A stretch of 57,432 nucleotides of DNA from Perkinsus chesapeaki ATCC PRA-425 (taxonomy: Eukaryota > Protista > Perkinsozoa). The notes under the pieces are model-generated. The model made no database searches. It had not been told where the DNA came from and saw only the letters and a list, made by a program, of their open reading frames with translations. Each line of letters opens with the position of its first letter. Position 1 is the stretch's first letter. The position numbers were made by a program, and so were the translations under genes. The DNA is taken from positions 1 to 57,432 of the forward strand of contig JAAPAO010000176.1 of NCBI GenBank assembly GCA_013115145.1, read 5' to 3'. Positions 7,801 to 45,800 of this stretch are shown here, in pieces.

Positions 7801-10644
7801 TGGAGTTGAACAGTGGGGATAATAATAATAATACAGCTCCTGCTCCTGCTCCTGCTGCTGTAAATAAGTTCACCTATTATACCTATACATATTGTATTAA
7901 TGAATATATCGTTGTAGGTTGTATGGTTACCATTGTTGTTGCGGCAATCCTCTCAATTATTATTACATAATAATATTATAACATTACATTTATTATACTG
8001 CCATACTACTACCACTAACAACAACGGCATACAAGATGAAGAAGGAGTTGATGATGATGATGATGATGATAGTTGTTGTAATTATTCACCATATCTTCGT
8101 ATTGGTATCATAAACCCTAATGGTTATGATAATAATAACATTAATGCTAATATAGAGGTACATTCTGACATTAATAAAGCTGCTGCTGCTGCTGATGCTG
8201 GTGCTGGTGCTGGTGCTGATGCTGGTGCTGGTGCTGATGCTGATGCTGCTGATGCTGGTGCTGGTGCTGGTGCTTTGAATACATTGATAGATAATAATAA
8301 CAATGACTTGCCACTGCCGCAGCAGTGGCAGCCACTGAGAATACTTAACTTGCACAAGTATCGTTTAAGATTAGGATATCAATGTTTATCAAGAGTACTT
8401 ATTAAAAGAGATTATAATTATAAGTGTATGAGAATATTTACTAAATATAACGATTATCAATTACCAAATAATAATAAAACATCTACTGAAGTGCCGCCTC
8501 CTCAATTGATGATAAGTTGCTATAGACTCAAGGATGGTTTTGAGGAGGGAAATAAACAAGAAGAGGAGGAGGAGGGAAAGTGTAATGATAATCATGTTGT
8601 TGATAATAATATATTACCTAATAACATTGTATTTGCTAATTTACCTTTATTATCTCATTATGATTATTATATCCCATGGTCCGATGGTATTTTTGTACTT
8701 ATCGTTCACACATTTATCAATGATAATGGTGCTGCTGCTGCTGCTGGTGGTGGTGGTATGATATCAGTTGAAGCATGTGCCACGGGTGTCATACCATATA
8801 ATAATGGTAGATTATTATTATCCAATGGCGAGGGGTGTATGGTTAATATTATGCCTAATAATGAAGGATATAATACTAGAGAATGGGTACATACAATAAA
8901 TGATGGGACGGTGATATGTTCTCCTCATTATAGAATATTTAGAGAAAGGCTCACTATCATAAGTACACAACAGGAAGAAGAAGAAGAAGAAGAAGAACCC
9001 ATGGTGTTGGTATCACTTGGCATTCAATTAATGATAAAAAATATAAACGACACAAGTGGTGATGGTAGTGGTGGTGAAGACAGTCAAGAAGGATCTCGAA
9101 AGGATATCAAAGTACGTCTTATGATCCAACATGAACCCAACAGCAGCAGCAGCAGCAGCTCACAGATGATAAATGATGATGAGAATAATAATATAATTGA
9201 TAATTATTCAACTCTTAATAATTGGCGTAACTCGTTGGAGACTGTATGTGAGCAAGTTTGGTCAGCAGCAGCAAGTGAAGCTGGTGAATCATCAACATCA
9301 TATATAATATTACCATACCTACTATTACGAAAAGATGTTGTATATATTATAGAATGTCTCAAGCATAATAATAACAACAATAACAATAACACGTCAATAT
9401 CCTCATCATCCTCCTCCTCATCCAACTCTGATATAAGTTATAAACCAATACCAGCAGCACCACTACCCTGTGAAGGGGAGCCCGGAAACAGCAGCATCAG
9501 CAGTAGCAGGAGCAGGAGCGGGGGGGCAGGTGTATGGAGGTTAACAGCACATTGGTATAGTAAGAATAATAGAAGTATAGTTGAGCTGGGTGAAGATACT
9601 ATTCAACATGATTTGGAAGTATTATGTCGAGCAAGATGGGAAATATATGATAAAGGTAGATCATTAAGAGGTAATGAAAGTCGAAGGAAGTACTTACAGG
9701 AGGACTTATCGGGGAAACAACAATATGATAATAATAATAAAGAGGAGGAAGAAGAAGGCATCATCATCGTTCATCATTGTGATAAAGATATTGATAAGTT
9801 CATTGAAGATTGTATTAATGATGGTGATGGTTATGTTGTTGGACCCCATGATGGTGATGGTGGTAGATTAAGATATTCTGACGATGTCTATAGGATAACA
9901 CCATTAGATAGGGAAATGTTGAATACTTTACACATGGAGTTAAAAGAATTTATAGAAGATTCGAACATTAATATATGGAAAAATGAAACAATGAGGAGAG
10001 TTGAGGAAGAATTTACTAAGAAGGTTATTGTTGACTATCCTTGTATTATTAATACTTACATAAGAGAGCTAATAATTAATGATAAACAACAAACAAGGGA
10101 TTGTGAATATGGAAAGATTATTAAGAGAAATGATATACGTAATTTAATGATAAATAAAATTGATAATATTAATGAACTGATGAAATGTTTAATACCTCCT
10201 CCTCCAATCGAAGGTCATGCAGAGAAAGATGATGATGGTGATGGTCATGATGGTGATTTAGAATCAGATATAGAAAGATTAAAAGGATTATTATTGGAGG
10301 TAGATAAATTAAATGCATCATCATCAACAACGATAACAAATGCCGATTTTTATCAAAAAGCTATACGGAAATTGTCACTTTTGAGCATAGTAGATGATAT
10401 GAATAAAATGATGAGAGAATGGTCATCATCAGATTCGGGGACTCCTCTGTTAGCTGATGATGATAAATTACAAGTTGAACTAGGAAACAAGTTGAATAAA
10501 GCTGAGGATTTGATGAACAGTCTTATTAATGATGGAGTATATATTAACGAGATTAAGATTCGTAATAGTTTAGATAAATTAGAAAATGATATAATAAACA
10601 TCACCGACCCATGGTTTAACAACAACAACAACAAGAATGACTGA
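4890..10644 (+). CDS. Androglobin-like protein (calpain-like N-terminal domain; many small exons plus a ~2.7-kb terminal exon)
   Basis: Exons read IHSWKRID, YLWELIYPQ, YPLYNPYGRYIVKLFINNKWRMIE-VDDRMP, LLPRSSDGSFWPAIICKAIIK and IISALTGW (calpain CysPc-like). The terminal ORF contains RARWEIYDKGRSLRGNESRRKYL, resembling the androglobin C-terminal WE..EPGR..KA...R..FL motif. Joining both halves into one gene is inferred. Confidence 0.65.
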
Positions 10645-10748: not shown

Positions 10749-11730
10749 TTCTAATAAATATTGTTGTTTGATTGTGTTTCGATGTAAATTGATGTAGCAA
10801 TGATGTATGATGATTAATGATATGACATTAAGAGCAGCAGCATCAGCATCAGAAGTATATTAAACCTAAATAGAAGTATAGTCATACATGTGATAGCAAA
10901 CTATCACAGTAGAAACGATGATAAAAGTTCGAAAGGCAGCAAAGGCAGCAGCCGGAAGAGAGTGTAACAGGCAAGCATATTATTATCTTTACCAACTACT
11001 CCCAACATGGCATCATTTGATAATCAAAATTAATGTTGTTTCGCAGTCTTGAGGGAATATGTCATATAGAGAAGCAGCATGAGGTGCACCTTGGATCGGA
11101 ACTGATGATGATGATGCAGAGGAATTTAGATACCTGATACTATTATTCGTAATTCGTTCGAGCAGGGCGGCGGCGGCGATGGCGGCAGCATGCCCAAACT
11201 ATAACAACCGTGGTTTATTCTATTCTATATACTTGATGATAATGTCTGCTGCTGCCTGTTTAATATGGGGTTTATAGTAGTATCAGACTTTACATGAGTT
11301 TAAGGTAGGTAACGGGTGCTGCTATGAGAGCAGCCTCGAAGATATTGATATACACTTTTATCAATACCAACACAACACTATAAAGCATTTATCTACCGTT
11401 AATTAACTAATAATAGGTTTAATCTCACCGTAATCCCACTCATCAGAGTAGCATCATCATGATGATTCATCATCATCTTGAGGGTTGGTTTCTTTTACCT
11501 ATACTCACTTTCGAACAATCAGCATCATCATCATCATCATCATCAGCAGTTAACATTCTCCTTCGAGATCTTTCCCGAGGTTGATCTCTATGATAATATT
11601 TATATTATTAATATTAAATCACCCACAAGTCGGATAATCATCATCATCAAGACGATGATGATGATGCTTTTAAGATAGGATTAGGTTAATGCTGCTGTGA
11701 CTGGATGCTATAATGTTAATAATAATACTA

Positions 11731-11927
11731 CAGTACGTGTCATGTAGAACGCGCGCTTCTTGACAACTCGGTCATTCACTAAGTACAACGAGATTTCGAT
11801 TAATTCCTTCACTGTATACCTTAGAAATGCCCCTAGTTATGCAATCCAAGTTGCCGAGTCCAAACTCTCGAAATACTTGTTACGCATATTTTCGACCCTC
11901 TGCGCGCATTTTCATGCACCGTGCGCG
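11731..11927 (+). repeat. Left terminal inverted repeat (197 bp)
   Basis: Reverse complement of 13804-14000 with 7 mismatches, counted by hand. Confidence 0.97.
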
Positions 11928-13803: not shown

Positions 13804-14000
13804 CGCGCACGGTGCATGAAAATGCGCGCAGAGGGTCGAAAATATGCGTAACAAGTATTTCGAGAGTTTGGACTCGGCAACTTGGATTACATAACTAGGG
13901 GCATTTCTAAGGTGTACAGTGAAGGAATTAATCGAAATTTCTTTGTACTTAGCGAATGACCGAGTTGTCAAGAAGCGCGCGTTCTAGATGACGCGTACTG
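13804..14000 (-). repeat. Right terminal inverted repeat (197 bp)
   Basis: Reverse complement of 11731-11927 with 7 mismatches, counted by hand. Confidence 0.97.
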
Positions 14001-14373
14001 TACTACAACCCAGAACCCACATTATTATTATAGACACTTGAAAGCGGTATTAATGGAAGACGATGGCAATAACTAGAACGATGTTGATGTTTGTCAGAGT
14101 TATTAAATATATATCATTAGTGATGATTTAAAAGCAAGCCTTTGTAAATCGAGCACTAGGGTAATGATGAAAGAAGACAGTAATAAGAAAGTAGACCGAT
14201 AAGAATACTGCCCCAAAAAGGCAACGAATAGCAGCAGGAGGAGGAGGACAATAACAGTAACTTAGAGAGGACACTTAAGTCATATATCCACCAATGTGGT
14301 AATAGACAAGACGACTGAGACAGAATTGTTGTCGTTGTAGTAGTAGTAGTAGTATCATCATCATCATCAGTCA

Positions 14374-24884: not shown

Positions 24885-26138
24885 TTATGCGGTAGTAGTA
24901 GCAGCAACCTCAGCTAAGTTGGAAAATGTTAGTTTCATAGCATCGATATAACCAACTTCATTATACACTAATCCATGTTTATTAAATAATTCTTTAACTC
25001 TTTTATTGACATAACCAGGGAATCTAAATTGTGGACATGATGGGAATAGATGATGTTCTATTTGATAATTTAAATAACTCATTAACCATGTTACTATTAT
25101 ATTATTTGTTGCAACATTCATTGTATGTTTTGAGGCGTATTCCAACCAATCAACTGTTGTATCGTTATTATTAATAACTGGTAGATGAGTATGTGATAAA
25201 GCAAAATGTATAAATATGTACATACCACCAACATGTACACTTGCTATATAACATATTAATACTGATAATAATCCATACTCAATAACCAAATAACCAATAA
25301 TTGAATAACGAACCAATAACCATAATGATTCCATTATTTGTCCAGTTCTGATAATGTGTCTTGGATGGAGGTAAAATTGCCAAAAAAACGACACAAGTAA
25401 TGTTGATAATGGTGCAAAGAGTATTGATTGATACTTAATCCATAATGTAGGTAATTTATTATTTAATATAGCCTTGTTGAACGCTACTAATGGTAATGTT
25501 TGTAAATCAACATCTTTACCTAAATGTTGTGGTGCTGCATGATGCTTATTATGTGCATTACGCCACCAAGCCGCTGACATACCACATCCAATACCAAAGT
25601 ATAATTCTTGAATGAATTGATCAATCTTCCAATAACCAGTTAAAGAATGATGACCACCTTCATGCATTAACCAACCAGCTCGTCCTTGTGATATACCTAA
25701 TATAGCACAACCAATATAAACATTATTAGTATGTAATGTTAAATAGAATCCAATCATATAAAGTATAATAACCTCCATACAACGATAAATAATATGACAA
25801 ATACTTGGTTCGAATATACCTTTCTTTATCAGCTCATCTCTTAAACTTTTGAAATCATCAAGAGCTGACCTTTTAGAAGGGGTAATTATACTATTTCGTA
25901 TTTTATCATCATCGATCGTACGTGATGGTAATGTATTCAATATCTTATCAGCTTTAACACTTCCCGTATGAAATTCACGATATGCATCAGTTGCATCATT
26001 ACCAATATTAAATAATATAATTTTACCACCAGGATGACGATTAATAAATCTAGTTATATCATATATACGATTATTAATGATAATCTCAATAGGTTTATTA
26101 GTATCGCTTGTTTTATTATTAGTAGTAGTAGCTACCAT
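24885..26138 (-). CDS. Cytochrome b5-fused front-end fatty acid desaturase, likely delta-5 (intronless)
   Basis: HPGG heme motif and His boxes HEGGH, HNKHH, QIEHH. The ORF track extends to 26231, but the likely start is MVATTT at 26138, downstream of the conserved AGGCCCCTT motif. The delta-5 call rests on position in the cluster and the QGRAGWLMHEGGH motif. Confidence 0.9.
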   Translation of the reverse strand: MVATTTNNKTSDTNKPIEIIINNRIYDITRFINRHPGGKIILFNIGNDATDAYREFHTGSVKADKILNTLPSRTIDDDKIRNSIITPSKRSALDDFKSLRDELIKKGIFEPSICHIIYRCMEVIILYMIGFYLTLHTNNVYIGCAILGISQGRAGWLMHEGGHHSLTGYWKIDQFIQELYFGIGCGMSAAWWRNAHNKHHAAPQHLGKDVDLQTLPLVAFNKAILNNKLPTLWIKYQSILFAPLSTLLVSFFWQFYLHPRHIIRTGQIMESLWLLVRYSIIGYLVIEYGLLSVLICYIASVHVGGMYIFIHFALSHTHLPVINNNDTTVDWLEYASKHTMNVATNNIIVTWLMSYLNYQIEHHLFPSCPQFRFPGYVNKRVKELFNKHGLVYNEVGYIDAMKLTFSNLAEVAATTTA

Positions 26139-26154
26139 AATAATAAAAAAGAAG

Positions 26155-26163
26155 AAGGGGCCT
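26155..26163 (-). promoter_or_regulatory. AGGCCCCTT motif 16 nt upstream of the delta-5 desaturase ATG
   Basis: Minus strand TTATTAG|GCCCCTT-CTTCTTTTTTATTATT-ATG. Confidence 0.7.
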
Positions 26164-26345
26164 AATAACAAGATAATAAAAGGAATATATAAAATAAACA
26201 AGAAATCAACAATGATAATAATCATCATCATGATAAATATCCAATAACCATTATTATTTATATTTATTAAATAGTAATAGTATTACAGTCTAACTAACAT
26301 ACATCCACTTCATCGATGATATAGTCTTCTTTACATAATACTCTT

Positions 26346-27713
26346 TTATTTGCTCTTGTTCTTGTTTGATGATAATCTTTTAATATTTCTTATAACATTA
26401 TAATGTAATGTAGATATAGCAGCAGTTGTACAATTTAATATATTAGTCTCTTTATATTCTAAATTCAGTTCATTAGCTATTTCTTTAACTAATGGTGTTG
26501 TATATGGTAAATTATGTCTTGGCATAGTAGGAAATAAATGATGCTCAATCTGCATATTTAAACCACCAGTGATATAAAACCATAATTTATTTTCAAACTT
26601 TGTATTAGTAAATGAACCAATATTAATAGTAGTCTTTAATGTTTGACGTATTAATGATAATGAACTATTACTATCTATTCTAGGTTCATTATAATGACTA
26701 GCAAATACAACAATAGCAGTTAAGAATCCACTTAACATATATGATAATAATATTATTAACCAATAACCAGTAGTATATATAATATATATAATAAATATAA
26801 TATGTAATATTATAGCTATTGAATCCCTTCTAGCATGTTTACGTGTATACTTATTAATAGATTTACTTTGTCTAATACATACCATAATTGATTCATATAA
26901 CCAATATATATGTAACAATGTTAACATTGGTATATAATAACATGCTTGATATTTATTAATATTACCAACATTAAAATCCTCATAAAAATGTAATGGTGGT
27001 TGTGTTAATATATCTGGATCATGATTATATTGATTAGTTAAAACATGATGTGTATTATGTCGTAATTTCCACCATAATAATGTATTCCCTCTAAATAAAG
27101 CAGTTAACCAAGCTAAATAATCATTAATATTACACCATTTAGTATTAGATATTAATAATGATGTGTGATGTGACCAATCATGTCCTAACCAACCTAATTG
27201 AAACCATCCAAAACCAATTAATAATATACACCATATTTTACCATTATAATTACCATAATTACCAGACTCCAATTCATTATTCATATTTTGTGATATACTT
27301 AATAATAAAGCAAAACCAATGATAACCAAACCAAATGATATGATAGCTTTGATTACTTCATATCCAAAATTGGCTTTAAACCAACCATTACGTCTTGCTT
27401 TGGATTGTAGTCTATAATAAATAAGCTGCTCATTTGTTAATAAACCTTCATCAATACCAACTTCATTATTATTATTATTATTTCTATATTTAATAATACG
27501 TTCGATAGCTTCTTCAGAATGCATAGCCATGATAACATCGGTCGCATCTTTATTATTAAATGCTCTTAATACTTTAGAACCACCTGGATGATAACTTAAC
27601 CACCATTCACTTATATTAACCCATTTACCGAATAATTTAATATTCATAACATTATCTTTATTATTAGTCATATTATTATTGTTAGATATGATAGTATTAT
27701 TATTATCAACCAT
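26346..27713 (-). CDS. Cytochrome b5-fused front-end fatty acid desaturase, likely delta-8 (intronless)
   Basis: HPGG, HDWSHH, HNTHH and QIEHH motifs. The delta-8 call is by analogy to the P. marinus cluster. Confidence 0.88.
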   Translation of the reverse strand: MVDNNNTIISNNNNMTNNKDNVMNIKLFGKWVNISEWWLSYHPGGSKVLRAFNNKDATDVIMAMHSEEAIERIIKYRNNNNNNEVGIDEGLLTNEQLIYYRLQSKARRNGWFKANFGYEVIKAIISFGLVIIGFALLLSISQNMNNELESGNYGNYNGKIWCILLIGFGWFQLGWLGHDWSHHTSLLISNTKWCNINDYLAWLTALFRGNTLLWWKLRHNTHHVLTNQYNHDPDILTQPPLHFYEDFNVGNINKYQACYYIPMLTLLHIYWLYESIMVCIRQSKSINKYTRKHARRDSIAIILHIIFIIYIIYTTGYWLIILLSYMLSGFLTAIVVFASHYNEPRIDSNSSLSLIRQTLKTTINIGSFTNTKFENKLWFYITGGLNMQIEHHLFPTMPRHNLPYTTPLVKEIANELNLEYKETNILNCTTAAISTLHYNVIRNIKRLSSNKNKSK

Positions 27714-27729
27714 GATAATAGTAATAAAT

Positions 27730-27738
27730 AAGGGGCCT
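27730..27738 (-). promoter_or_regulatory. AGGCCCCTT motif 16 nt upstream of the delta-8 desaturase ATG
   Basis: Minus strand ACATCAG|GCCCCTT-ATTTATTACTATTATC-ATG. Confidence 0.7.
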
Positions 27739-27849
27739 GATGTAGACTAATAATAATAATAATGATGATGATACACTTAACAAAACAACAAGTATATCAT
27801 AATAATAATAACCTTACTCAATATCATTAAAAAACTATTAATCTACTTC

Positions 27850-29310
27850 TTATTCTTCTTCTTCTTTCTTATTATTATCATAATTTTGACTCTTAATAGC
27901 CAACCATATAGCAGAATTACATTTAAAACCACTACCAAAAGCCAATTGTAATATCCTATCACCAATTTTAATACGATTATTAACTTCAATATATTCTAAT
28001 TCATACCAAATACTACTACTACTTGTATTACCCTTATTGTATAATACACTACGACTAGGTAATATATCATAATCACTTAATTTAATATTATATTGTAATG
28101 AATCTAATACACCTCTACCTCCAGCATGTATACACCAATGATCGATACATTTCCTGAAATCTGGAATATATAACGAAGATGATGATTTATTATCATTAAA
28201 TAATATATCATATTTAACTTTAATAATAGATAATAATACTTTAATAATCTCTCTATAAGGTAATATTAATTTACCTAATCTTTTAAAATTCTGTTTAATA
28301 GCAATACCAGCTACTTTAATAATACTTTTTTGTAATCTTAATGTTATTATATTATTACTACTATCATCAGTTTCAATAATACTCTCAAAGCTTTCTTCAC
28401 CAATAACTTGTGTTCTTACAGTATTTAATAATTTATATTTACTTATATATCTATCATTATATTTGGATGATAATATAATAGCAGCAGCACCACATCTAAA
28501 TAATGTATTACCCATTAATGGTTCACGATCATTACCACGGTAAAAGCACCTTGTTAATATCTCAGTTGATACTATTAATGCCCTTGTATTAGGCGTATCA
28601 TTTAATAATCGTTTAGCTAAATCAATAGATATTATACCAGCACTACATCCCATACCACTTAAATTATATGTAATAATATCATCTCTCATATTAAAATGAT
28701 TAACTATCATCGCTGCATGCGATGGTATAGGATTATACATGGCACAATTAACAATAACATAATCGATACTTTTAGGGTTAATATTAGGTATTTTATTTAA
28801 TAATTTATTAACAGTATTAATAATAAGTTCTTTAGCTTCATATCTGGTATTATATGATGTAGCATTAACTGGTTTATTAGTATTAATACAATTAACAACA
28901 GCAGGTGGATATGCACCGCTTTTATCAGGACATGTACCAGAACGTTCTAATAAACGTTCCATAAACTCAATTGATTCTTCAGTATAACAATCTTGTATTT
29001 TAGCTATATTAATAATATCATTATGGCTTACTTTCCATTCTAGAGGTGCTTCAAATTGAGCATGATCAATACAATATATATGTGGTGAATTCATATACCA
29101 CCATAATAATATTAATAATGATATAATAATAGATATTATTATATAATAATTAATAATAATAAAACATATCATTATTAATATAATATTACTATATATTAAT
29201 AACCATTCTCCATAATAGGTCATAAATATAATTAAATAACCCACAAACCTCATACGTATAGTACTACTCGATAATTTATTGTTATTATTATCATTGCTGT
29301 TATTACACAT
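27850..29310 (-). CDS. FAE1-type 3-ketoacyl-CoA synthase (plant-like elongase condensing enzyme, intronless)
   Basis: NLSGMGCSAG (catalytic Cys), CIHAGGRGVLD (His), GNTSSSSIWYEL (Asn), AFGSGFKCNSAIW, and N-terminal TM helices. Confidence 0.95.
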   Translation of the reverse strand: MCNNSNDNNNNKLSSSTIRMRFVGYLIIFMTYYGEWLLIYSNIILIMICFIIINYYIIISIIISLLILLWWYMNSPHIYCIDHAQFEAPLEWKVSHNDIINIAKIQDCYTEESIEFMERLLERSGTCPDKSGAYPPAVVNCINTNKPVNATSYNTRYEAKELIINTVNKLLNKIPNINPKSIDYVIVNCAMYNPIPSHAAMIVNHFNMRDDIITYNLSGMGCSAGIISIDLAKRLLNDTPNTRALIVSTEILTRCFYRGNDREPLMGNTLFRCGAAAIILSSKYNDRYISKYKLLNTVRTQVIGEESFESIIETDDSSNNIITLRLQKSIIKVAGIAIKQNFKRLGKLILPYREIIKVLLSIIKVKYDILFNDNKSSSSLYIPDFRKCIDHWCIHAGGRGVLDSLQYNIKLSDYDILPSRSVLYNKGNTSSSSIWYELEYIEVNNRIKIGDRILQLAFGSGFKCNSAIWLAIKSQNYDNNKKEEEE

Positions 29311-29324
29311 TAAAGGGAACTATT

Positions 29325-29333
29325 AAGGGGCCT
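29325..29333 (-). promoter_or_regulatory. AGGCCCCTT motif 14 nt upstream of the KCS ATG
   Basis: Minus strand TTTCTTCTTCAGCAG|GCCCCTT-AATAGTTCCCTTTA-ATG, preceded by a pyrimidine tract. Confidence 0.7.
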
Positions 29334-29699
29334 GCTGAAGAAGAAATAAGCAACTATAATAATTAATAAAGCATCGTCGATGATACTAACACCAACGATA
29401 TGCGGACAATTAACGGATTGCACGCATGCGCATGAAAAGATTGTCTACTATAGTAGTTGTGCGAAGCGAAACGTCGGAAGGCGTTGATGATGATGAATTT
29501 AATGATGATAATGGTGAATATCCTTTATTATTATTAATAGGATGATGATGATTTATTATTAATAAGATATTGAATAGGGATAATAAGACACATTACAATA
29601 CCAGTAGAGTACTATTATTAAATATACTATTTACATTAATTATTATTTCAATACTACAACAATATTACCCCTATACTATTAATATAGGTATTCTACTAT

Positions 29700-32600
29700 A
29701 CTGCTACCCCCATTTATTAAATTAATCAACAACCATGTTGTGTTATCATTATTCAATTTAACTAATAACACAACCAACAACACTTTTGTTCTTTTTGTTG
29801 TTATTAACAACATTATTATATATTGATAATATCATGGATATTCCTAGTAATGTATGCTTTACTTAATATTATTGAATTATTATTATTAGATAATCTCATC
29901 ATCCTCATCTTTAAATCATCATTATCATACTTACTCTTTGTTATCTGAATATAATAGAATGGAGTACGGTAGTATTCTTAATATAACTTACTATATTATT
30001 AATACAATTATTATTATTATCTATCTTAATATTTATTAAACATGTATTTATATCCATTATATATCTTGGTATAATGATATTATGCATATCACCATTTATT
30101 GCTGTATACATGGATATTGTACTATACGATATAGTAGTCGGATTATTACCACCACCACCACCAACAACAACACTATTAGTATTACCTAATAATAATATAT
30201 ATTATAATAAATATAATTATTATTACCACCATCATCATCACCACCACCTTTCATGGTCATAATAGATGATGATGTTTTGCCTACTATTAATGAATTATCT
30301 TTAAGTACTTGTATATATGATGATTTATCATTTAATAATATTATTGCTATATAATCTCTATTGGGCAATAGATCAGGTAATGCTAAAAACAGCAGCAGCA
30401 TCATCATCAGCAACAGCAGGAGGATATATAACGTTTGTTAATAATAGAGATAATATTAGTAATAGTGTTATTATTATTACATCTTATATTATCACATGAA
30501 CCATATAATATTCTTATCCTAGTAGTATTACCATTATTAAATATATTATTATTATATATATTATCATTATCTAATAATATACATCTAACTATATACAATA
30601 TTATTATTATTACTATTAATAATATATGATGATGTTACTGGTTTAGAACAAGTTAATTTAATTGATGGAGCATATAATTCCCAAGCACTATATTGTGATG
30701 CTGTTGATGATGATGAGCATGTATTCCTAGATATCATCATAACCTATTAATATATATCCAACTTAATAGTGTATTATTATTACATATCCTTTAGGTATAT
30801 AACATATTGTATATAGTATATCCTCTTTAACATCATCACCACCACTATTATTATTATTATCATAATTATTAGTATTACCTCCTTTATTATCATCTATTAT
30901 TGTAGTATTAGAAGATGGCTGATTATTTAATCTCAAGTTAGTTGATACCTACGACGTTATACAATACTAACATACTACTATATTACAACTACTTTATCAA
31001 CAACAACAACATCGTCATTAATATCATCATATCTATTAATAATATTTACATATTATTATTACTATTATTATTACCTATTCCGTTCCCATAATTCATATTC
31101 TAATAATGAACTTCTACTCTTTGATACATTATTATTACTAATAATATACATATTAGTTCATTATTATTATATTATTACTATTACCTATAATTGGTGTTGG
31201 ATACTAATTGTTGGATACTAACATAACCAGTTGATAATGTAGCACCATCTTCACCTTCAATCCTTCTACCCGCCTCGCTCTGACAACTATAATTACTATT
31301 TATATTTATTATTATTACTATTACCATTGAATATATACAATTAGTAATTATATAACATTTATTAATATTCATTAATGTATTAACTACATCACTTTTCCTT
31401 CTATTAATAATATCATTTGATGATGCTTTAAAGAAGTATTCCAATGGATAAAATAACATAACTGTCTTATATGATATTATTGATAATGTACCTATCTTAT
31501 AGGTATAATTCACCATTCAATATTAATACACTAGTATGTTATCTTTATTATTACCAATAGTTGCATGCTGATCTCTAATATCTATACCGTATCTTTCATT
31601 ATCACTATTAATTATTATCATACCTATATAATCCTTATTATTATCAATATCAGGGATACCTAACAACAATATATAACTCAAGCAACATATACAGTATAAT
31701 AACAACAGTAATACAACAACAACAACAACAACAATATCTCCGTTATTATAATTACTACCATTATAATCATCTTTACAATCACCAAATAACAAATGTAATC
31801 TACTATCCTTATTAATATTATCTAATGTATATCTTAATTTATTCTCATTACTAAAATCTAATGTATGCCCCAATTCTTGTATAGGTTGATTACCTAATAA
31901 TAATAAGACTAATTTATAATAGTACAATAATCATAATTATATCACCAGATATAAAATCAATAATATTTGATGGTGATATCTTTTTAGAGCATGATAGTTC
32001 ATTATCTGGTGCTGCTACTGCCATGTTATTATTATTGCATATCCTTCTAGACATATATAACTGATAATATATATAATTATATTACTGATATTATTATATA
32101 TATTACTGATCCTTTAGGTATATAACATAATATTATATCAAGTCCAATTCTATTATTATCTAATAATAATTATAATTTACGATATTATATATATTAGTAT
32201 TACCACTGGATGTCTCATTTCTTAATTCAGTTAAAGCTGGTGTTGTTGTTGTTGATAACCTATTATAATGTTTATTATTATTATCAATATTATGCGCTAT
32301 CTAATAAAATAAATATCATTTATATTATGACATTATATATTACTCTAATAATATCAACATCATCATCTTCAGTATTATATTCCCTAATTTATAAGTTATA
32401 TTATAATATATTATATTATTACCTATTATTTATCTCTAATAAACTATCCTTATTATTATTTATATTATTATCCTTATTATTTATATTATTATCCTTATTA
32501 TTTATATTATTATCCTTAATATTATTTATATTATTATCCTTATTATTTATATTATTATCCTTATTATTTATATTATTATCCTTATTATTTATATTATTAT

Positions 32601-42871: not shown

Positions 42872-45800
42872 ATGCACTATAGTTATTATGTTATATAGTT
42901 TTTTCTCTTTATTATTATGGTATTAGCTGGTAATGATCGTCGAGCGTATGATGAACTGTTAAAAGGGGAAATAGGACATTTTCGTAGCGAAGTTGGTTTA
43001 GATAATAGAATGGATATGGTATCATCAAATTGGTTACCAATGTAACAACGATAAAAACAATAATAACATTATCACAAGATCATCCTTTTACTGATTATTA
43101 TTAGATTCCTCTATTATACAACTGATAGATTATTCAAAACTGGATTTCAGAAGAAATTAGCAATAATAACACTTAAAGAATTAGTTAAATTACCGTACGC
43201 TAATCCACATTATATATGTAATAATAATAATAATAACTATTACTACTACTGGTTATAGTGCCAATAACAAAAAGAAGAAGTGAAACAACAACAACAACAC
43301 CTATACAATTAGCTGTATCATCTATTGACGGTGAATATGGTATTGAAGCCCTAAAATGGTAGTAGTAATAATAATAGTGGTTATTGTTGTTGCTGTTGTT
43401 GTTATTGTTGTTGTTGTTGATATTAGTTTATTAAGTATAGATGGTTGTAAAGAACGTTGTGGAGTTATGGTAACATCTGATGGATATACAGCATTAGAAA
43501 TAGCTAAGTTAAGGAATATACCAAAGATGATAGAATTATTAGTAATAATCATAATAATGAATAATAACTATTATTATTAATAATAATAGGATGAGTTGAA
43601 TATGGGTAAACTATCAAGTAACAATAATATATTAAAGAGGATATATAATAATAATACGAATAAAGACGAAGAACGACAAGAGCAGAAGCAGGAGGAGGAG
43701 GATGATGATGAGCAACCATATTATGATATAAATATGCGGGATGATGATACACACAATGATAATATCAAAGATAATAATAATAATAACAAGTTACAACATA
43801 GAACGAGAACATCATCAACATCAACAATACTAGCAGATAGTAAGGACAATTAAAGTATATATTATTATATACAGTTATTAGATAACATCATTACAACAAC
43901 AACACCATCATCAACTAGTAGAAGTAGGGTGACATCATCATCATCATCATCACCATCGTATCAATATCGTAGTAGTGGTAGTAGTCTACACAGTTGTTGT
44001 ATATGTAAAGATGATGATGATAATAATAATAATACTTATAATGGGTAATTAATGATAATAATTATGATGATGATTATATTATTATATTATTTGTATGGTT
44101 AGGTTAGTAAAATGTGATAAATGCAATAGATATGCACATAAAACATGTTATAAAGGTTTTATTATCAAAGGTGGGTCGATGACACAAAAGGGACGGCGAC
44201 ACAATAAAACATCAACAACAACAAGAATATGTTTATCATGTCGAGCGGTAATAGCAATGATGATAGTGTATTATTGTTGTTATTGTTGTTGTAATAGGGT
44301 TCATCATTACCATTCAAATGTGGTATTTGTAATATGGATGATAATAAAGGTTCATTAATGGTATATAGAAGTGATTTACCTGGACAGTTTGTACATTTAA
44401 GATGTTCCTTATTTCTTAAACCAGATCGAGTAGTAGTCATTATTATTAATAATAAATAATATGTTACTATAAATAATATAGTCAGTTACGGCAAGATGCT
44501 TTATATTCAAATGATAAACTGCAAATTATTGGCAATTTAGTTAAGATTGGCCGTCGTAGACATTGTTATATATGTTCTAAACCTGGAGGTGTAATAATTA
44601 TTATTGTTATTTTATCCTACTACTACCACTACTACTTGTTATTTAGTTTCGGTGTGGTTATCCTGGTTGTAGTGTACGTTATCACATAACTTGTCTTGAT
44701 AATAATAATAATGATTGTTGTGGATATGGTGGATACAAAAGGATAATAAGAGGACCAGGAAAGAAGATAACAGTGAATAATAATATTGCGATGGAAAACT
44801 TCGAAAGAATGACTAAATGTAGTCATTCATATTTGAGAATGTATTAACAATAATAATAATACTACCAAGTTGTTCTTGTTCTTGTTCTTGTTGTTGGTGT
44901 TATTATTTATTATTATGATTAGATATTGCTCAAGACATATTAATGATAATTTATGTATATGTGGCGAAAGGATAACAAATGATGATAAAGAAAATAATAG
45001 GACAATGGATTGCTCTCTAAAAGGTAATATGAAATTATAATAATTTTGTTCTGTGTTATATTGAAATATATAATGTATTAATATAAAAACGGGGGCATGC
45101 TTTGGCTTTGGCAGGTAAAGGATGTGTATATGGTACATTACATAGAAAATGTATATTTAACAGAATGAACAAAGAAGAAGAAGAATTGGGAAAAGAAGGA
45201 GTCATAAATAATAGAGACGACGAACCATCTACAGCAGGCCCCTCCTCCTCCTGCAGCTGCAGCTGCTGTTGTCCTCATTGTAATGATTATTATTGAAGGA
45301 GTACTATTCAATATAATATTATTATTATTATTATCAGGTGAATTTTGTATATCATCATCTGGTAAATTACCACTAGGTCCATGTTTAAAAACATGTATTT
45401 ATTGTAATTATGCCTATCGTGATAGGTAATTAGGTTATTACTACTACTACTACAATAGATGTGTATTATATCTCTGTTATTATTAGGATAATATCATCTG
45501 ATGAAGAGTCTGATGGTGAAGAACTGGGAATAAATGATAATATACCTCATAAGGCTGTATTACCTAAACATAGACCTGCTAATGATAATAATAATAACAC
45601 CATTAATAATGATAATAAGAGAAGGAAGATAACAACAACAACGAGGGAAACAACTGAAGACAGAAAGATCGATATAGAACAGATTAATAACAAGAAGAGT
45701 AGCAGCAGCAGTATTGATGGAATTAATAATAATGTTGTAAAAAGCATCGTCGATGTAAAAGTATGTGAAGATAAAAGTTCATTAAAGGAATTAATAAAGG

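What the first reader, a model, noticed from the sequence alone, without database searches (positions are those of the whole stretch)
26139..29333. Identical 9-mer AG|GCCCCTT 14-16 nt before the ATG of all three PUFA-cluster genes
Seen: AGGCCCCTT (minus strand) at 29325-29333, 27730-27738 and 26155-26163, spaced 14, 16 and 16 nt from the KCS, delta-8 and delta-5 start codons. Each copy begins with the AG of a YAG (CAG, CAG, TAG), and the surrounding intergenic DNA is otherwise dissimilar and AT-rich. I did not see it at the other gene starts I could assign in the window. At a roughly estimated 27% GC, fewer than 0.1 copies are expected by chance on both strands. Established: Perkinsus uses spliced-leader trans-splicing, and the homologous P. 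marinus cluster was reported as co-transcribed. Inference: the motif is a shared trans-splice acceptor plus a conserved 5'-UTR heptamer (GCCCCTT) that resolves the polycistron and/or co-regulates the three enzymes. I know of no description of it.
Basis: partly seen in the sequence, partly recalled or inferred. Interest (0 to 1): 0.85.

Follow-up and report, generated by a model that had tools for sequence, protein, structure and literature searches.

The report
Shared 9-mer heading Perkinsus PUFA genes
Each of the three clustered arachidonic-acid genes of this Perkinsus genome has the same 9-base tag (AGGCCCCTT) just before its start codon; the tag is kept in two other Perkinsus species and looks like the point where each gene's messenger RNA begins, although no RNA data could be obtained to prove this.

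Summary
AGGCCCCTT occurs three times in the 57 kb window, all on the minus strand. The copies lie 14, 16 and 16 nt before the ATGs of the KCS, delta-8 desaturase and delta-5 desaturase genes (0.09 copies expected by chance).

The same 9-mer heads all three orthologous genes in both cluster copies of P. marinus. In three P. olseni assemblies it appears as AGGCCCCTT or AGGCCTCTT. The three species share only 58-75% protein identity, and GC content is 31% in the window against 44-47% in the other loci. The motif is the longest shared word in six of nine pairwise comparisons of orthologous upstream regions. Two of the other three involve the P. olseni copy with the T variant.

The motif always follows a pyrimidine-rich stretch and an AG. 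It is absent from about 24 other gene starts. None of about 134 spliced-leader junctions in P. marinus ESTs is followed by GCC, so it is not a generic signal.

My best reading (about 0.5) is a trans-splice acceptor plus a conserved first heptamer of each mature 5' UTR in a polycistron. The main rival is a specialised transcription initiator.

A by-product: the published P. marinus KCS and delta-5 ORFs probably start too far upstream.

The parts
29325..29333 (-). Motif copy 1, AGGCCCCTT, 14 nt before the KCS start codon; preceded by C (CAG)
   Evidence: Orthologous copies: P. marinus L001 8063-8071 and P. olseni L002 469-477.
27730..27738 (-). Motif copy 2, AGGCCCCTT, 16 nt before the delta-8 desaturase start codon; preceded by C (CAG)
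   Evidence: Orthologous copies: L001 9670-9678; L002 2212-2220 (AGGCCTCTT); L008 8366 and L009 3340 (AGGCCCCTT).
26155..26163 (-). Motif copy 3, AGGCCCCTT, 16 nt before the delta-5 desaturase start codon; preceded by T (TAG)
   Evidence: Orthologous copies: L001 11198-11206; L002 3693-3701 and L009 4887 (AGGCCTCTT).
29334..29358 (-). Pyrimidine-rich 25-mer directly upstream of motif copy 1 (72% C+T on the sense strand)
   Evidence: Background 25-mers have 49% pyrimidine, sd 12%.
27739..27763 (-). Pyrimidine-rich 25-mer directly upstream of motif copy 2 (64% C+T)
26164..26188 (-). Pyrimidine-rich 25-mer directly upstream of motif copy 3 (76% C+T)
27850..29310 (-). FAE1-type 3-ketoacyl-CoA synthase (delta-9-elongating enzyme orthologue), 486 aa, first gene of the cluster
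   Evidence: Pfam PF08392, E 2e-82. 63% identical to the P. marinus protein and 58% to the P. olseni protein.
26346..27713 (-). Delta-8 front-end desaturase orthologue (cytochrome b5 fusion), 455 aa, second gene
   Evidence: Pfam. 61% identity to P. marinus ABF58684 over residues 1-299.
24885..26138 (-). Delta-5 front-end desaturase orthologue (cytochrome b5 fusion), 417 aa, third gene
   Evidence: Pfam. 74% identity to P. marinus ABF58685 and 70% to the P. olseni protein. Upstream in-frame ATGs at 26225-26231 would add an unconserved 31-aa extension.
27714..27849 (-). KCS to delta-8 spacer, 136 nt from stop to ATG
   Evidence: The orthologous spacers are 150 nt (P. marinus) and 159 nt (P. olseni).
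26139..26345 (-). Delta-8 to delta-5 spacer, 207 nt from stop to ATG
   Evidence: The orthologous spacers are 156 nt and 148 nt.
29407..29433 (-). Block conserved upstream of KCS only (TGCGCATGCGTGCAATCCGTTAATTG), 73 nt upstream of motif copy 1; candidate promoter or regulatory element of the whole cluster
   Evidence: Alignment A1. CAYGCGTGC occurs once in the window, and it lies upstream of KCS in every P. marinus and P. olseni locus examined, although those loci also hold one or two further matches elsewhere in the same KCS-upstream intergenic region. It lies 76 nt upstream of the motif in P. olseni and about 265 nt upstream in P. marinus.

Best explanation
The 9-mer marks the 5' boundary of each cistron in a three-gene polycistronic unit (KCS, delta-8 desaturase, delta-5 desaturase). 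Transcription would start upstream of KCS, near the conserved GCAYGCGTGC block. At each gene, a pyrimidine tract followed by YAG would serve as a spliced-leader trans-splice acceptor. Every mature mRNA would then read SL + GCCCCUU + 4-24 nt + AUG. The heptamer GCCCCUU is under selection of its own. It would act either as an exon-side signal that helps the acceptor to be used, or as a common 5'-UTR tag read by one RNA-binding factor that keeps the three enzymes in step.

Shown here: the motif, its position, its conservation, its specificity within the sample, and the acceptor-like anatomy. Taken from the literature: spliced-leader trans-splicing in Perkinsus, and co-transcription of the P. marinus cluster. 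Inferred: that the leader is joined at this AG, and everything about what the heptamer does.
For: (1) There are three exact copies 14-16 nt before the three ATGs, against 0.09 expected.
(2) The motif is conserved at all three genes in two P. marinus cluster copies (L001, L007/L006) and in three P. olseni assemblies (L002/L005, L008, L009). The only variation is C/T at position 6. The proteins are only 58-75% identical, and GC is 31% in the window against 44-47% in the other loci.
(3) The motif, extended by flanking bases in most pairs, is the longest word shared in six of the nine pairwise comparisons of orthologous upstream regions. The flanking bases differ even between P. olseni isolates.
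(4) Acceptor anatomy: AG is invariant; the base before it is a pyrimidine in 8 of 9 sites, and the ninth has a CAG 2 nt upstream. The 25 nt upstream are 60-76% pyrimidine at every site, against a background of 49-51% (sd 0.12).
(5) Short spacers are conserved in length (136-207 nt), and gene order is conserved.
(6) The only other conserved block lies upstream of the first gene alone, as expected for a single promoter.
(7) In-frame AUGs just upstream of the motif (window delta-5; P. marinus KCS and delta-5; P. olseni KCS) would give unconserved N-terminal extensions. Conserved N-termini (MCN/MCH, MV) begin at the first AUG after the motif, so the mRNA 5' end should lie between them.
(8) The two SL-bearing P. 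marinus ESTs in which both junction and start codon were read have short distances from SL to AUG, about 17 and 29 nt.
(9) Literature: Perkinsus mRNAs carry a 21-22 nt spliced leader (PMC3101222, PMC9399869). The P. marinus cluster is described as 'clustered and co-transcribed as an operon' (PMC2868825, citing J Biol Chem 282:2996).
Against: Conserved exon-side bases next to an SL acceptor are, to my knowledge, not a known requirement of trans-splicing. In P. marinus ESTs the first base after the leader is usually T (65 of 134), with G in only 26. One site (P. marinus delta-5) has GAG rather than YAG at the motif. The YAG plus pyrimidine-rich context fits a transcription initiator equally well. 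The original co-transcription paper could not be read here. As I recall it, the evidence was RT-PCR across the spacers, which would also detect read-through. Whether the window's own species trans-splices rests on genus-level literature and on unchecked scan notes.
Confidence: 0.5

Rival explanations
1. The 9-mer is a specialised transcription initiator (core-promoter element). Each of the three genes has its own transcription start at or next to the A of YAGGCCCCTT. The shared element recruits the same initiation factor and so co-regulates the pathway. The reported co-transcription would then be read-through.
For: The motif has a strict sense orientation and a strict position just before the ATG at all nine independent sites. 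A pyrimidine-purine step (CA or TA) sits at the motif start in 8 of 9 sites, as at most eukaryotic start sites. The motif and what follows are pyrimidine-rich, like the TCT / 5'-TOP initiators of ribosomal-protein genes, which are also specific to one gene set (my own knowledge). Exact conservation of 9 bases is more typical of a DNA- or initiation-level element than of bases beside a splice site. Only 14.7% of P. marinus ESTs showed a leader, so not every mRNA need be trans-spliced.
Against: In P. marinus the resulting 5' UTRs would be only 13-16 nt. No other conserved promoter-like block accompanies the delta-8 and delta-5 copies, whereas KCS has one. Spacers of 136-207 nt would have to hold a 3' UTR, a poly(A) site and a whole promoter. 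The cluster is reported as co-transcribed.
Confidence: 0.25
2. The 9-mer is a binding site for a sequence-specific DNA-binding regulator, for example a C2H2 zinc-finger type that recognises CCCCT-like cores. It switches the three genes on together and has no role in forming the mRNA 5' end.
For: The motif is shared by three functionally linked genes and conserved across species. The G/C-rich core stands out in AT-rich DNA.
Against: Ordinary transcription-factor sites tolerate both orientations and variable distances. Here all nine independent sites are in the sense orientation and within 4-24 nt of the ATG, directly after a Y-tract and AG. No second copy or upstream cluster of sites is present.
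Confidence: 0.12
3. The motif is coding. It encodes Gly-Pro-Phe in a short N-terminal extension, as in the published P. marinus ORFs ABF58686 (…SGPFGMCNHDY…) and ABF58685 (…YRGPFSRMVLP…).
For: GGC CCC TTx is in frame with the downstream ATG at 6 of 9 sites, and four of these have an upstream in-frame ATG.
Against: Three of nine sites are out of frame, and 6 of 9 is not significant (my binomial estimate is p about 0.04 for one frame and about 0.12 for any frame). The window KCS has an in-frame stop 4 codons (12 nt) before its ATG, between the motif and the ATG. The window delta-8 and P. olseni delta-8 have no upstream ATG before a stop. The extensions share nothing but the motif.
Confidence: 0.02
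4. The motif is a chance or neutral leftover, for example of a duplicated upstream segment.
For: The two desaturases are paralogues and could have been duplicated together with their leader.
Against: KCS is unrelated to the desaturases yet carries the motif. The motif is the only block kept between species whose flanks are saturated with change, and it resists a strong AT drift. Zero of 100 shuffles give three copies.
Confidence: 0.01

Closest known systems
Intercistronic trans-splice sites of nematode operons (SL2 sites with the U-rich 'Ur' element) and kinetoplastid polycistron processing sites
   Same: Same-strand genes about 100-200 nt apart. A pyrimidine tract plus AG lies just upstream of each downstream cistron. 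A spliced leader is thought to cap each mRNA.
   Different: In those systems the known signals lie upstream of the AG (Ur element, polypyrimidine tract). To my knowledge, no conserved exon-side heptamer is described. Here the first gene of the unit carries the same element. Use of the AG as an acceptor is not shown.
The Perkinsus marinus arachidonic-acid 'operon' (Venegas-Caleron et al. 2007, J Biol Chem 282:2996; cited in PMC2868825)
   Same: The window holds the orthologous cluster: same three enzymes, same order, same short spacers.
   Different: No description of this motif was found (no paper in the library holds both 'Perkinsus' and GGCCCCT), though the original paper could not be read. 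The published ORFs for the elongating enzyme (510 aa) and the delta-5 desaturase (411 aa) start upstream of the motif and read through it.
TCT / 5'-TOP polypyrimidine initiator of ribosomal-protein and translation-factor genes in animals
   Same: A short, strand-specific, pyrimidine-rich motif at the very 5' end of the mRNAs of one functional gene set, giving them common control.
   Different: TOP motifs start at the cap with C. Here a leader would precede the motif, which starts with G after AG. The gene set is a lipid pathway. No transcription start data exist.
Spliced-leader acceptor sites in dinoflagellate tandem gene arrays (Bachvaroff and Place 2008, PMC2488372; seen only as title and abstract)
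   Same: Sister lineage with a homologous leader. An AG acceptor lies in short spacers between same-strand genes.
   Different: Those arrays are repeats of one gene, not three different enzymes of one pathway. I did not read that paper for motif content.

Membership tests
Spliced-leader trans-splice acceptor site | AG dinucleotide preceded by a pyrimidine and a pyrimidine-rich tract | tested here: met
   AG is invariant at all 17 copies examined. There is a pyrimidine at -1 in 8 of 9 independent sites. The upstream 25-mers are 60-76% C+T, against 49-51% background.
Spliced-leader trans-splice acceptor site | Mature RNA shows the leader joined exactly 3' of the AG | not testable with these tools
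No RNA-derived contigs were found for these genes. The ESTs for these genes lie beyond the stored part of the EST file.
Spliced-leader trans-splice acceptor site | The organism uses SL trans-splicing | tested here: inconclusive
   This is established for the genus in the literature. For this genome there are only unchecked scan notes of SL relics. There is no SL 3'-end 8-mer in the window.
Eukaryotic operon (polycistron resolved by trans-splicing) | Same-strand genes with short spacers, conserved in order and spacing | tested here: met
   Spacers are 136 and 207 nt in the window, 150/156 nt in P. marinus and 159/148 nt in P. olseni, with the same gene order.
Eukaryotic operon (polycistron resolved by trans-splicing) | One primary transcript spans the genes | not tested
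   Known only from the literature statement for P. marinus. The original paper is not held.
Eukaryotic operon (polycistron resolved by trans-splicing) | A single promoter upstream of the first gene | tested here: inconclusive
   A conserved block (GCAYGCGTGC…CATTG/AATTG) is present only upstream of KCS in all three species. Promoter activity was not tested.
Initiator / TCT-like core promoter element | The motif overlaps the transcription start site | not testable with these tools
   No 5'-end data are available. The sequence is compatible: a pyrimidine-purine step at the motif start in 8 of 9 sites.
Generic Perkinsus 5'-UTR or acceptor consensus | Present at a large fraction of gene starts or SL junctions | tested here: not met
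   The motif is at 0 of about 24 other gene starts. There are no further sense-strand copies in about 120 kb. None of about 134 SL junctions in P. marinus EST contigs is followed by GCC.
Coding N-terminal extension | In frame with the ORF, with an upstream start codon and no intervening stop | tested here: not met
   Three of nine sites are out of frame. There are stops or missing ATGs at the window KCS, window delta-8 and P. olseni delta-8.

The most novel reading that the evidence does not exclude
GCCCCUU is a dedicated RNA 'operator' of a eukaryotic operon. It would be a leader-proximal 5'-UTR tag carried only by the three arachidonic-acid mRNAs and read by one RNA-binding factor. That factor would set their translation or stability together, or would choose which spliced-leader variant they receive. 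If so, pathway-level control in Perkinsus would be exerted after transcription, at the junction made by trans-splicing.
Probability: 0.2. Interest if true: 0.75.

Novelty: new variant of a known kind. Interest (0 to 1): 0.55.

Why it matters
Perkinsus species are major parasites of oysters and clams, and they make arachidonic acid through this three-gene cluster, one of the few operon-like units reported in alveolates. A short element conserved across species at the head of each cistron gives a concrete handle on two open questions. One is how polycistrons are resolved in the perkinsid/dinoflagellate lineage. The other is why some mRNAs and sites are chosen for spliced-leader addition. The element can be tested directly with the existing P. 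marinus transfection system. It also has practical value: it points to the true start codons. The GenBank ORFs of the P. marinus elongating enzyme and delta-5 desaturase, which have been used in plant PUFA engineering, probably carry 25 and 13 spurious N-terminal residues.

Tried and rejected
The delta-8 protein was used only up to residue 299, and the Rfam scans were split at 26700 and 27000.

(2) Transcript contigs. Exact-protein look-ups of the window KCS and of the P. marinus delta-8 and delta-5 proteins found only genomic records. A profile of both desaturase N-termini, meant to catch short RNA-derived fragments, found only a P. olseni genomic fragment. The 10.6 kb Logan contig L006 appears to be genomic.

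(3) P. marinus ESTs. The stored file is cut at 400 kb and does not reach the delta-8 and delta-5 clusters. It was still useful as a control for how generic the motif is.

(4) The original J Biol Chem paper is not held.

(5) RNA structure. The leader plus each P. marinus 5' UTR folds no better than shuffles (z -0.8 to +0.7), so I dropped a junction-hairpin idea.

(6) Rfam. There are no matches in the window.

(7) Coding reading of the motif as Gly-Pro-Phe: rejected.

(8) The near-match at 45236-45244 (AGGCCCCTC) appears to lie inside a coding exon, not at a gene start.

(9) Literature searches for the motif string gave only unrelated primer hits, and none together with 'Perkinsus'.

(10) A genome-wide scan was not possible, because only the window and about 65 kb of other Perkinsus DNA could be fetched.
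Full report
**Observation.** AGGCCCCTT occurs exactly three times in the 57,432-base window, all on the minus strand, at 29325-29333, 27730-27738 and 26155-26163. Dinucleotide-preserving shuffles expect 0.09 copies, and none of 100 shuffles reached three.

Reading the minus strand and recomputing by script, the copies end 14, 16 and 16 nt before the ATGs at 29310, 27713 and 26138. The base before each copy gives CAG, CAG and TAG.

Pfam identifies the three ORFs as a FAE1-type 3-ketoacyl-CoA synthase and two cytochrome-b5 front-end desaturases. Pairwise comparison with the functionally named P. marinus proteins shows that the second gene is the delta-8 orthologue (61% identity over the first 299 residues). 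The third gene is the delta-5 orthologue (74%). The three upstream regions share nothing else apart from AT-rich low-complexity words. Relaxed searches give only chance-level hits elsewhere. The closest one, AGGCCCCTC at 45236, appears to lie inside a coding exon.

**Which organism.** The closest proteins are those of Perkinsus marinus and P. olseni. The three species are about equally far apart: KCS is 58-64% identical and delta-5 is 70-75% identical in all pairs. The window therefore comes from a third Perkinsus-type species with a much lower GC content, 31% overall and 24-26% in the cluster, against 44-47% in the other loci.

**Conservation.** I fetched the following orthologous clusters:
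- P. marinus scaffold GG686838, which carries two copies of the cluster (L001 and L007). A Logan contig, L006, carries the same motif-flanking sequences as L007.
- P. olseni from three assemblies or isolates (L002 and L005 are identical in these upstream regions; L008 and L009 differ).

Every KCS, delta-8 and delta-5 gene in every one of these loci has the 9-mer on the sense strand just before its start codon.
- P. marinus: exactly AGGCCCCTT at all six sites.
- P. olseni KCS: AGGCCCCTT.
- P. olseni delta-8: AGGCCTCTT or AGGCCCCTT, depending on the isolate.
- P. olseni delta-5: AGGCCTCTT.

The gap to the ATG is 4, 5 and 7 nt in P. marinus and 7, 7 and 24 nt in P. olseni.

In six of the nine pairwise comparisons of orthologous upstream regions, the motif, extended by flanking bases in most pairs, is the longest shared word. 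Two of the other three involve the P. olseni copy with the T variant. Bases immediately beside the motif differ even between P. olseni isolates, for example tgc/tac before it and tttgaca/ttcgaca/tttaaca after it. A G/C-rich 9-mer has thus been held fixed while the rest of the spacers diverged beyond recognition, and while one lineage drifted to extreme AT-richness. This is strong evidence of selection on the element.

**Specificity.** The motif is absent from the starts of about 24 other genes or long ORFs in the window and in the P. marinus and P. olseni flanks. In about 120 kb examined, the only other match to AGGCCYCTT is an antisense hit inside the SNF2 coding region.

As a further control I used the stored first 400 kb of the P. 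marinus EST consensus file (Additional file 1 of PMC2868825). It contains 134 copies of the leader's 3' end: GGCTCAAG 58 times and its complement 76 times. By my arithmetic about 12 of these are expected by chance. The base after the leader is T in 65, C in 29, G in 26 and A in 14. None of the 134 is followed by GCC. The single TCAAGGCCCC in the file lies inside a coding region.

The element is therefore not a general property of Perkinsus trans-spliced mRNAs. By my estimate, at most about 2% of leader-bearing EST clusters could carry it. Whether a few other genes share it cannot be settled without a whole-genome scan.

**Anatomy.** Across the nine independent sites (three genes in three species):
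- The AG is invariant.
- The base before the AG is a pyrimidine in eight. The ninth, P. marinus delta-5, has CAG two bases upstream.
- The 25 nt upstream are 60-76% pyrimidine on the sense strand, against a background of 49-51% with sd 0.12.
- The few bases between the motif and the ATG are also mostly pyrimidines.

The spacers are short and similar in length in all species (136-207 nt), and gene order is fixed.

Upstream of the first gene only, a second conserved block is present:
- window: TGCGCATGCGTGCAATCCGTTAATTG
- P. marinus: TGCGCACGCGTGCAAAACGCTCATTG
- P. olseni: TGTACATGCGTGCGTTGTGCTCATTG

These come from alignment A1, with supporting scans. The block lies 73 nt upstream of the motif in the window, 76 nt in P. 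olseni, and about 265 nt in P. marinus, which has an insertion. The delta-8 and delta-5 spacers have nothing comparable. This asymmetry, one promoter-like block for the cluster but one 9-mer per cistron, is what a polycistron with per-gene processing sites would look like.

**Start codons.** In P. marinus the annotated KCS start (L001 8001, 510 aa) lies 62 nt upstream of the motif. The conserved N-terminus MCN(H) begins at the first ATG after the motif (L001 8076, 485 aa), matching MCNN in the window and MCHH in P. olseni. An independent gene call on a Logan contig also gives 485 aa.

The GenBank proteins from the original functional study read through the motif as Gly-Pro-Phe: …IIISGPFGMCNHDY… for the elongating enzyme and MSSLTLYRGPFSRMVLP… for delta-5. 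These extensions have no counterpart in the other species. In the window, delta-5 likewise has in-frame ATGs 87-93 nt upstream that would add an unconserved hydrophobic stretch. The mRNA 5' ends therefore most probably lie between these upstream AUGs and the conserved AUG, which is at or near the motif.

A coding role for the motif itself is rejected. Three of nine sites are out of frame. The window KCS has an in-frame stop four codons (12 nt) before its ATG, between the motif and the ATG. Two delta-8 sites have no upstream ATG before a stop.

**Mechanism.** Perkinsus mRNAs receive a 21-22 nt spliced leader (PMC3101222 and PMC9399869). The P. marinus cluster is cited as 'clustered and co-transcribed as an operon' (PMC2868825). 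Putting this together with the anatomy, the best-supported model has three steps:
- One primary transcript starts upstream of KCS.
- At each cistron, the Y-tract plus YAG is used as a trans-splice acceptor.
- Each mature mRNA begins leader-GCCCCUU-(4-24 nt)-AUG.

The two leader-bearing ESTs in which both the junction and the start codon were read have comparably short leader-to-AUG distances, about 17 and 29 nt.

What the heptamer does is inference. It could be an exon-side signal that makes these acceptors efficient. It could also be a shared 5'-UTR tag for a single RNA-binding regulator that keeps the three enzymes in proportion. I put this model at about 0.5.

The main rival, at about 0.25, is that the 9-mer is a specialised initiator with a separate start site for each gene. 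The pyrimidine-purine step and pyrimidine-rich context fit this as well, and exact conservation of nine bases is more typical of such elements. Against it are three points: the very short UTRs it would give in P. marinus (13-16 nt), the lack of any further promoter-like conservation in the delta-8 and delta-5 spacers, and the reported co-transcription. An ordinary transcription-factor site (about 0.12) fits the strict orientation and position poorly.

**What could not be done.** No RNA evidence was obtained. 

Exact-protein and fragment searches found no transcript contigs. The ESTs of the delta-8 and delta-5 genes lie beyond the stored part of the EST file. The original paper is not held. Folding the leader plus 5' UTR gave no structure beyond shuffles, and Rfam found nothing in the window.

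**Novelty and verdict.** No paper in the searchable library contains both 'Perkinsus' and GGCCCCT. The spliced-leader papers I read do not describe any exon-side motif. The finding is real, conserved and, within the sample, specific to the arachidonic-acid cluster. It is best described as a new variant of a known kind: a cistron-boundary signal in an operon resolved by a spliced leader, unusual in having a conserved, apparently pathway-restricted heptamer on the mRNA side of the acceptor. Its exact role awaits 5'-end mapping, which is simple to do with public data. Interest is moderate to high for specialists (0.55).

Noticed in passing
L001 8001-8078 and 11175-11216; proteins P0242 and P0246: The GenBank ORFs of the P. 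marinus delta-9-elongating enzyme (ABF58686 and EEQ98033, 510 aa) and delta-5 desaturase (ABF58685, 411 aa) start at upstream ATGs and read through the 9-mer as Gly-Pro-Phe. Conserved N-termini in three species begin at the first ATG after the motif, so the true proteins are probably 485 aa and 398 aa.
   Followed up: yes
window 29407-29433 (minus strand); L001 7772-7797; L002 367-392: A block of about 26 nt (TGCGCAYGCGTGCAA…C/ATCATTG-like, with a near-palindromic GCAYGCGTGC core) is conserved upstream of KCS only, in all three species. It is a candidate promoter or regulator site of the whole cluster.
   Followed up: partly
L001 and L007 (P. marinus scaffold GG686838, 168101-202667): The P. 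marinus assembly carries two copies of the whole KCS/delta-8/delta-5 cluster, each followed by an MFS transporter gene, on one scaffold. The copies differ at scattered spacer bases but not in the motif. This is either a tandem duplication or haplotypes assembled in series.
   Followed up: partly
window 11726-11927 and 13804-14005: A 202-nt inverted repeat pair (96% complementary) flanks a 1.9 kb segment of about 50% GC, with two ORFs (230 and 245 aa) that have no Pfam match. It looks like a mobile element with long inverted ends, inserted in AT-rich DNA.
   Followed up: partly
window about 26216-26223 (minus strand); L001 about 11063-11069; L005 about 9912-9919: The heptamer ATCATTG(T) occurs in the delta-8 to delta-5 spacer of all three species. 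It lies 53-55 nt upstream of the motif in the window and P. olseni, and 135 nt upstream in P. marinus. By my estimate a triple match is expected about 0.02-0.1 times by chance. Its meaning is unknown.
   Followed up: no
L001 5950-6140 (minus strand): There are three tandem 88-bp repeats in the 3.2 kb region upstream of the P. marinus KCS gene. They are not present in the window.
   Followed up: no
window 29800-32000 (minus strand): The gene upstream of KCS on the same strand is broken by many very short (about 40-50 nt), extremely AT-rich GT…AG introns. The bases following their 3' splice sites are varied (T, A, A, G, A), not GCCCC.
   Followed up: no
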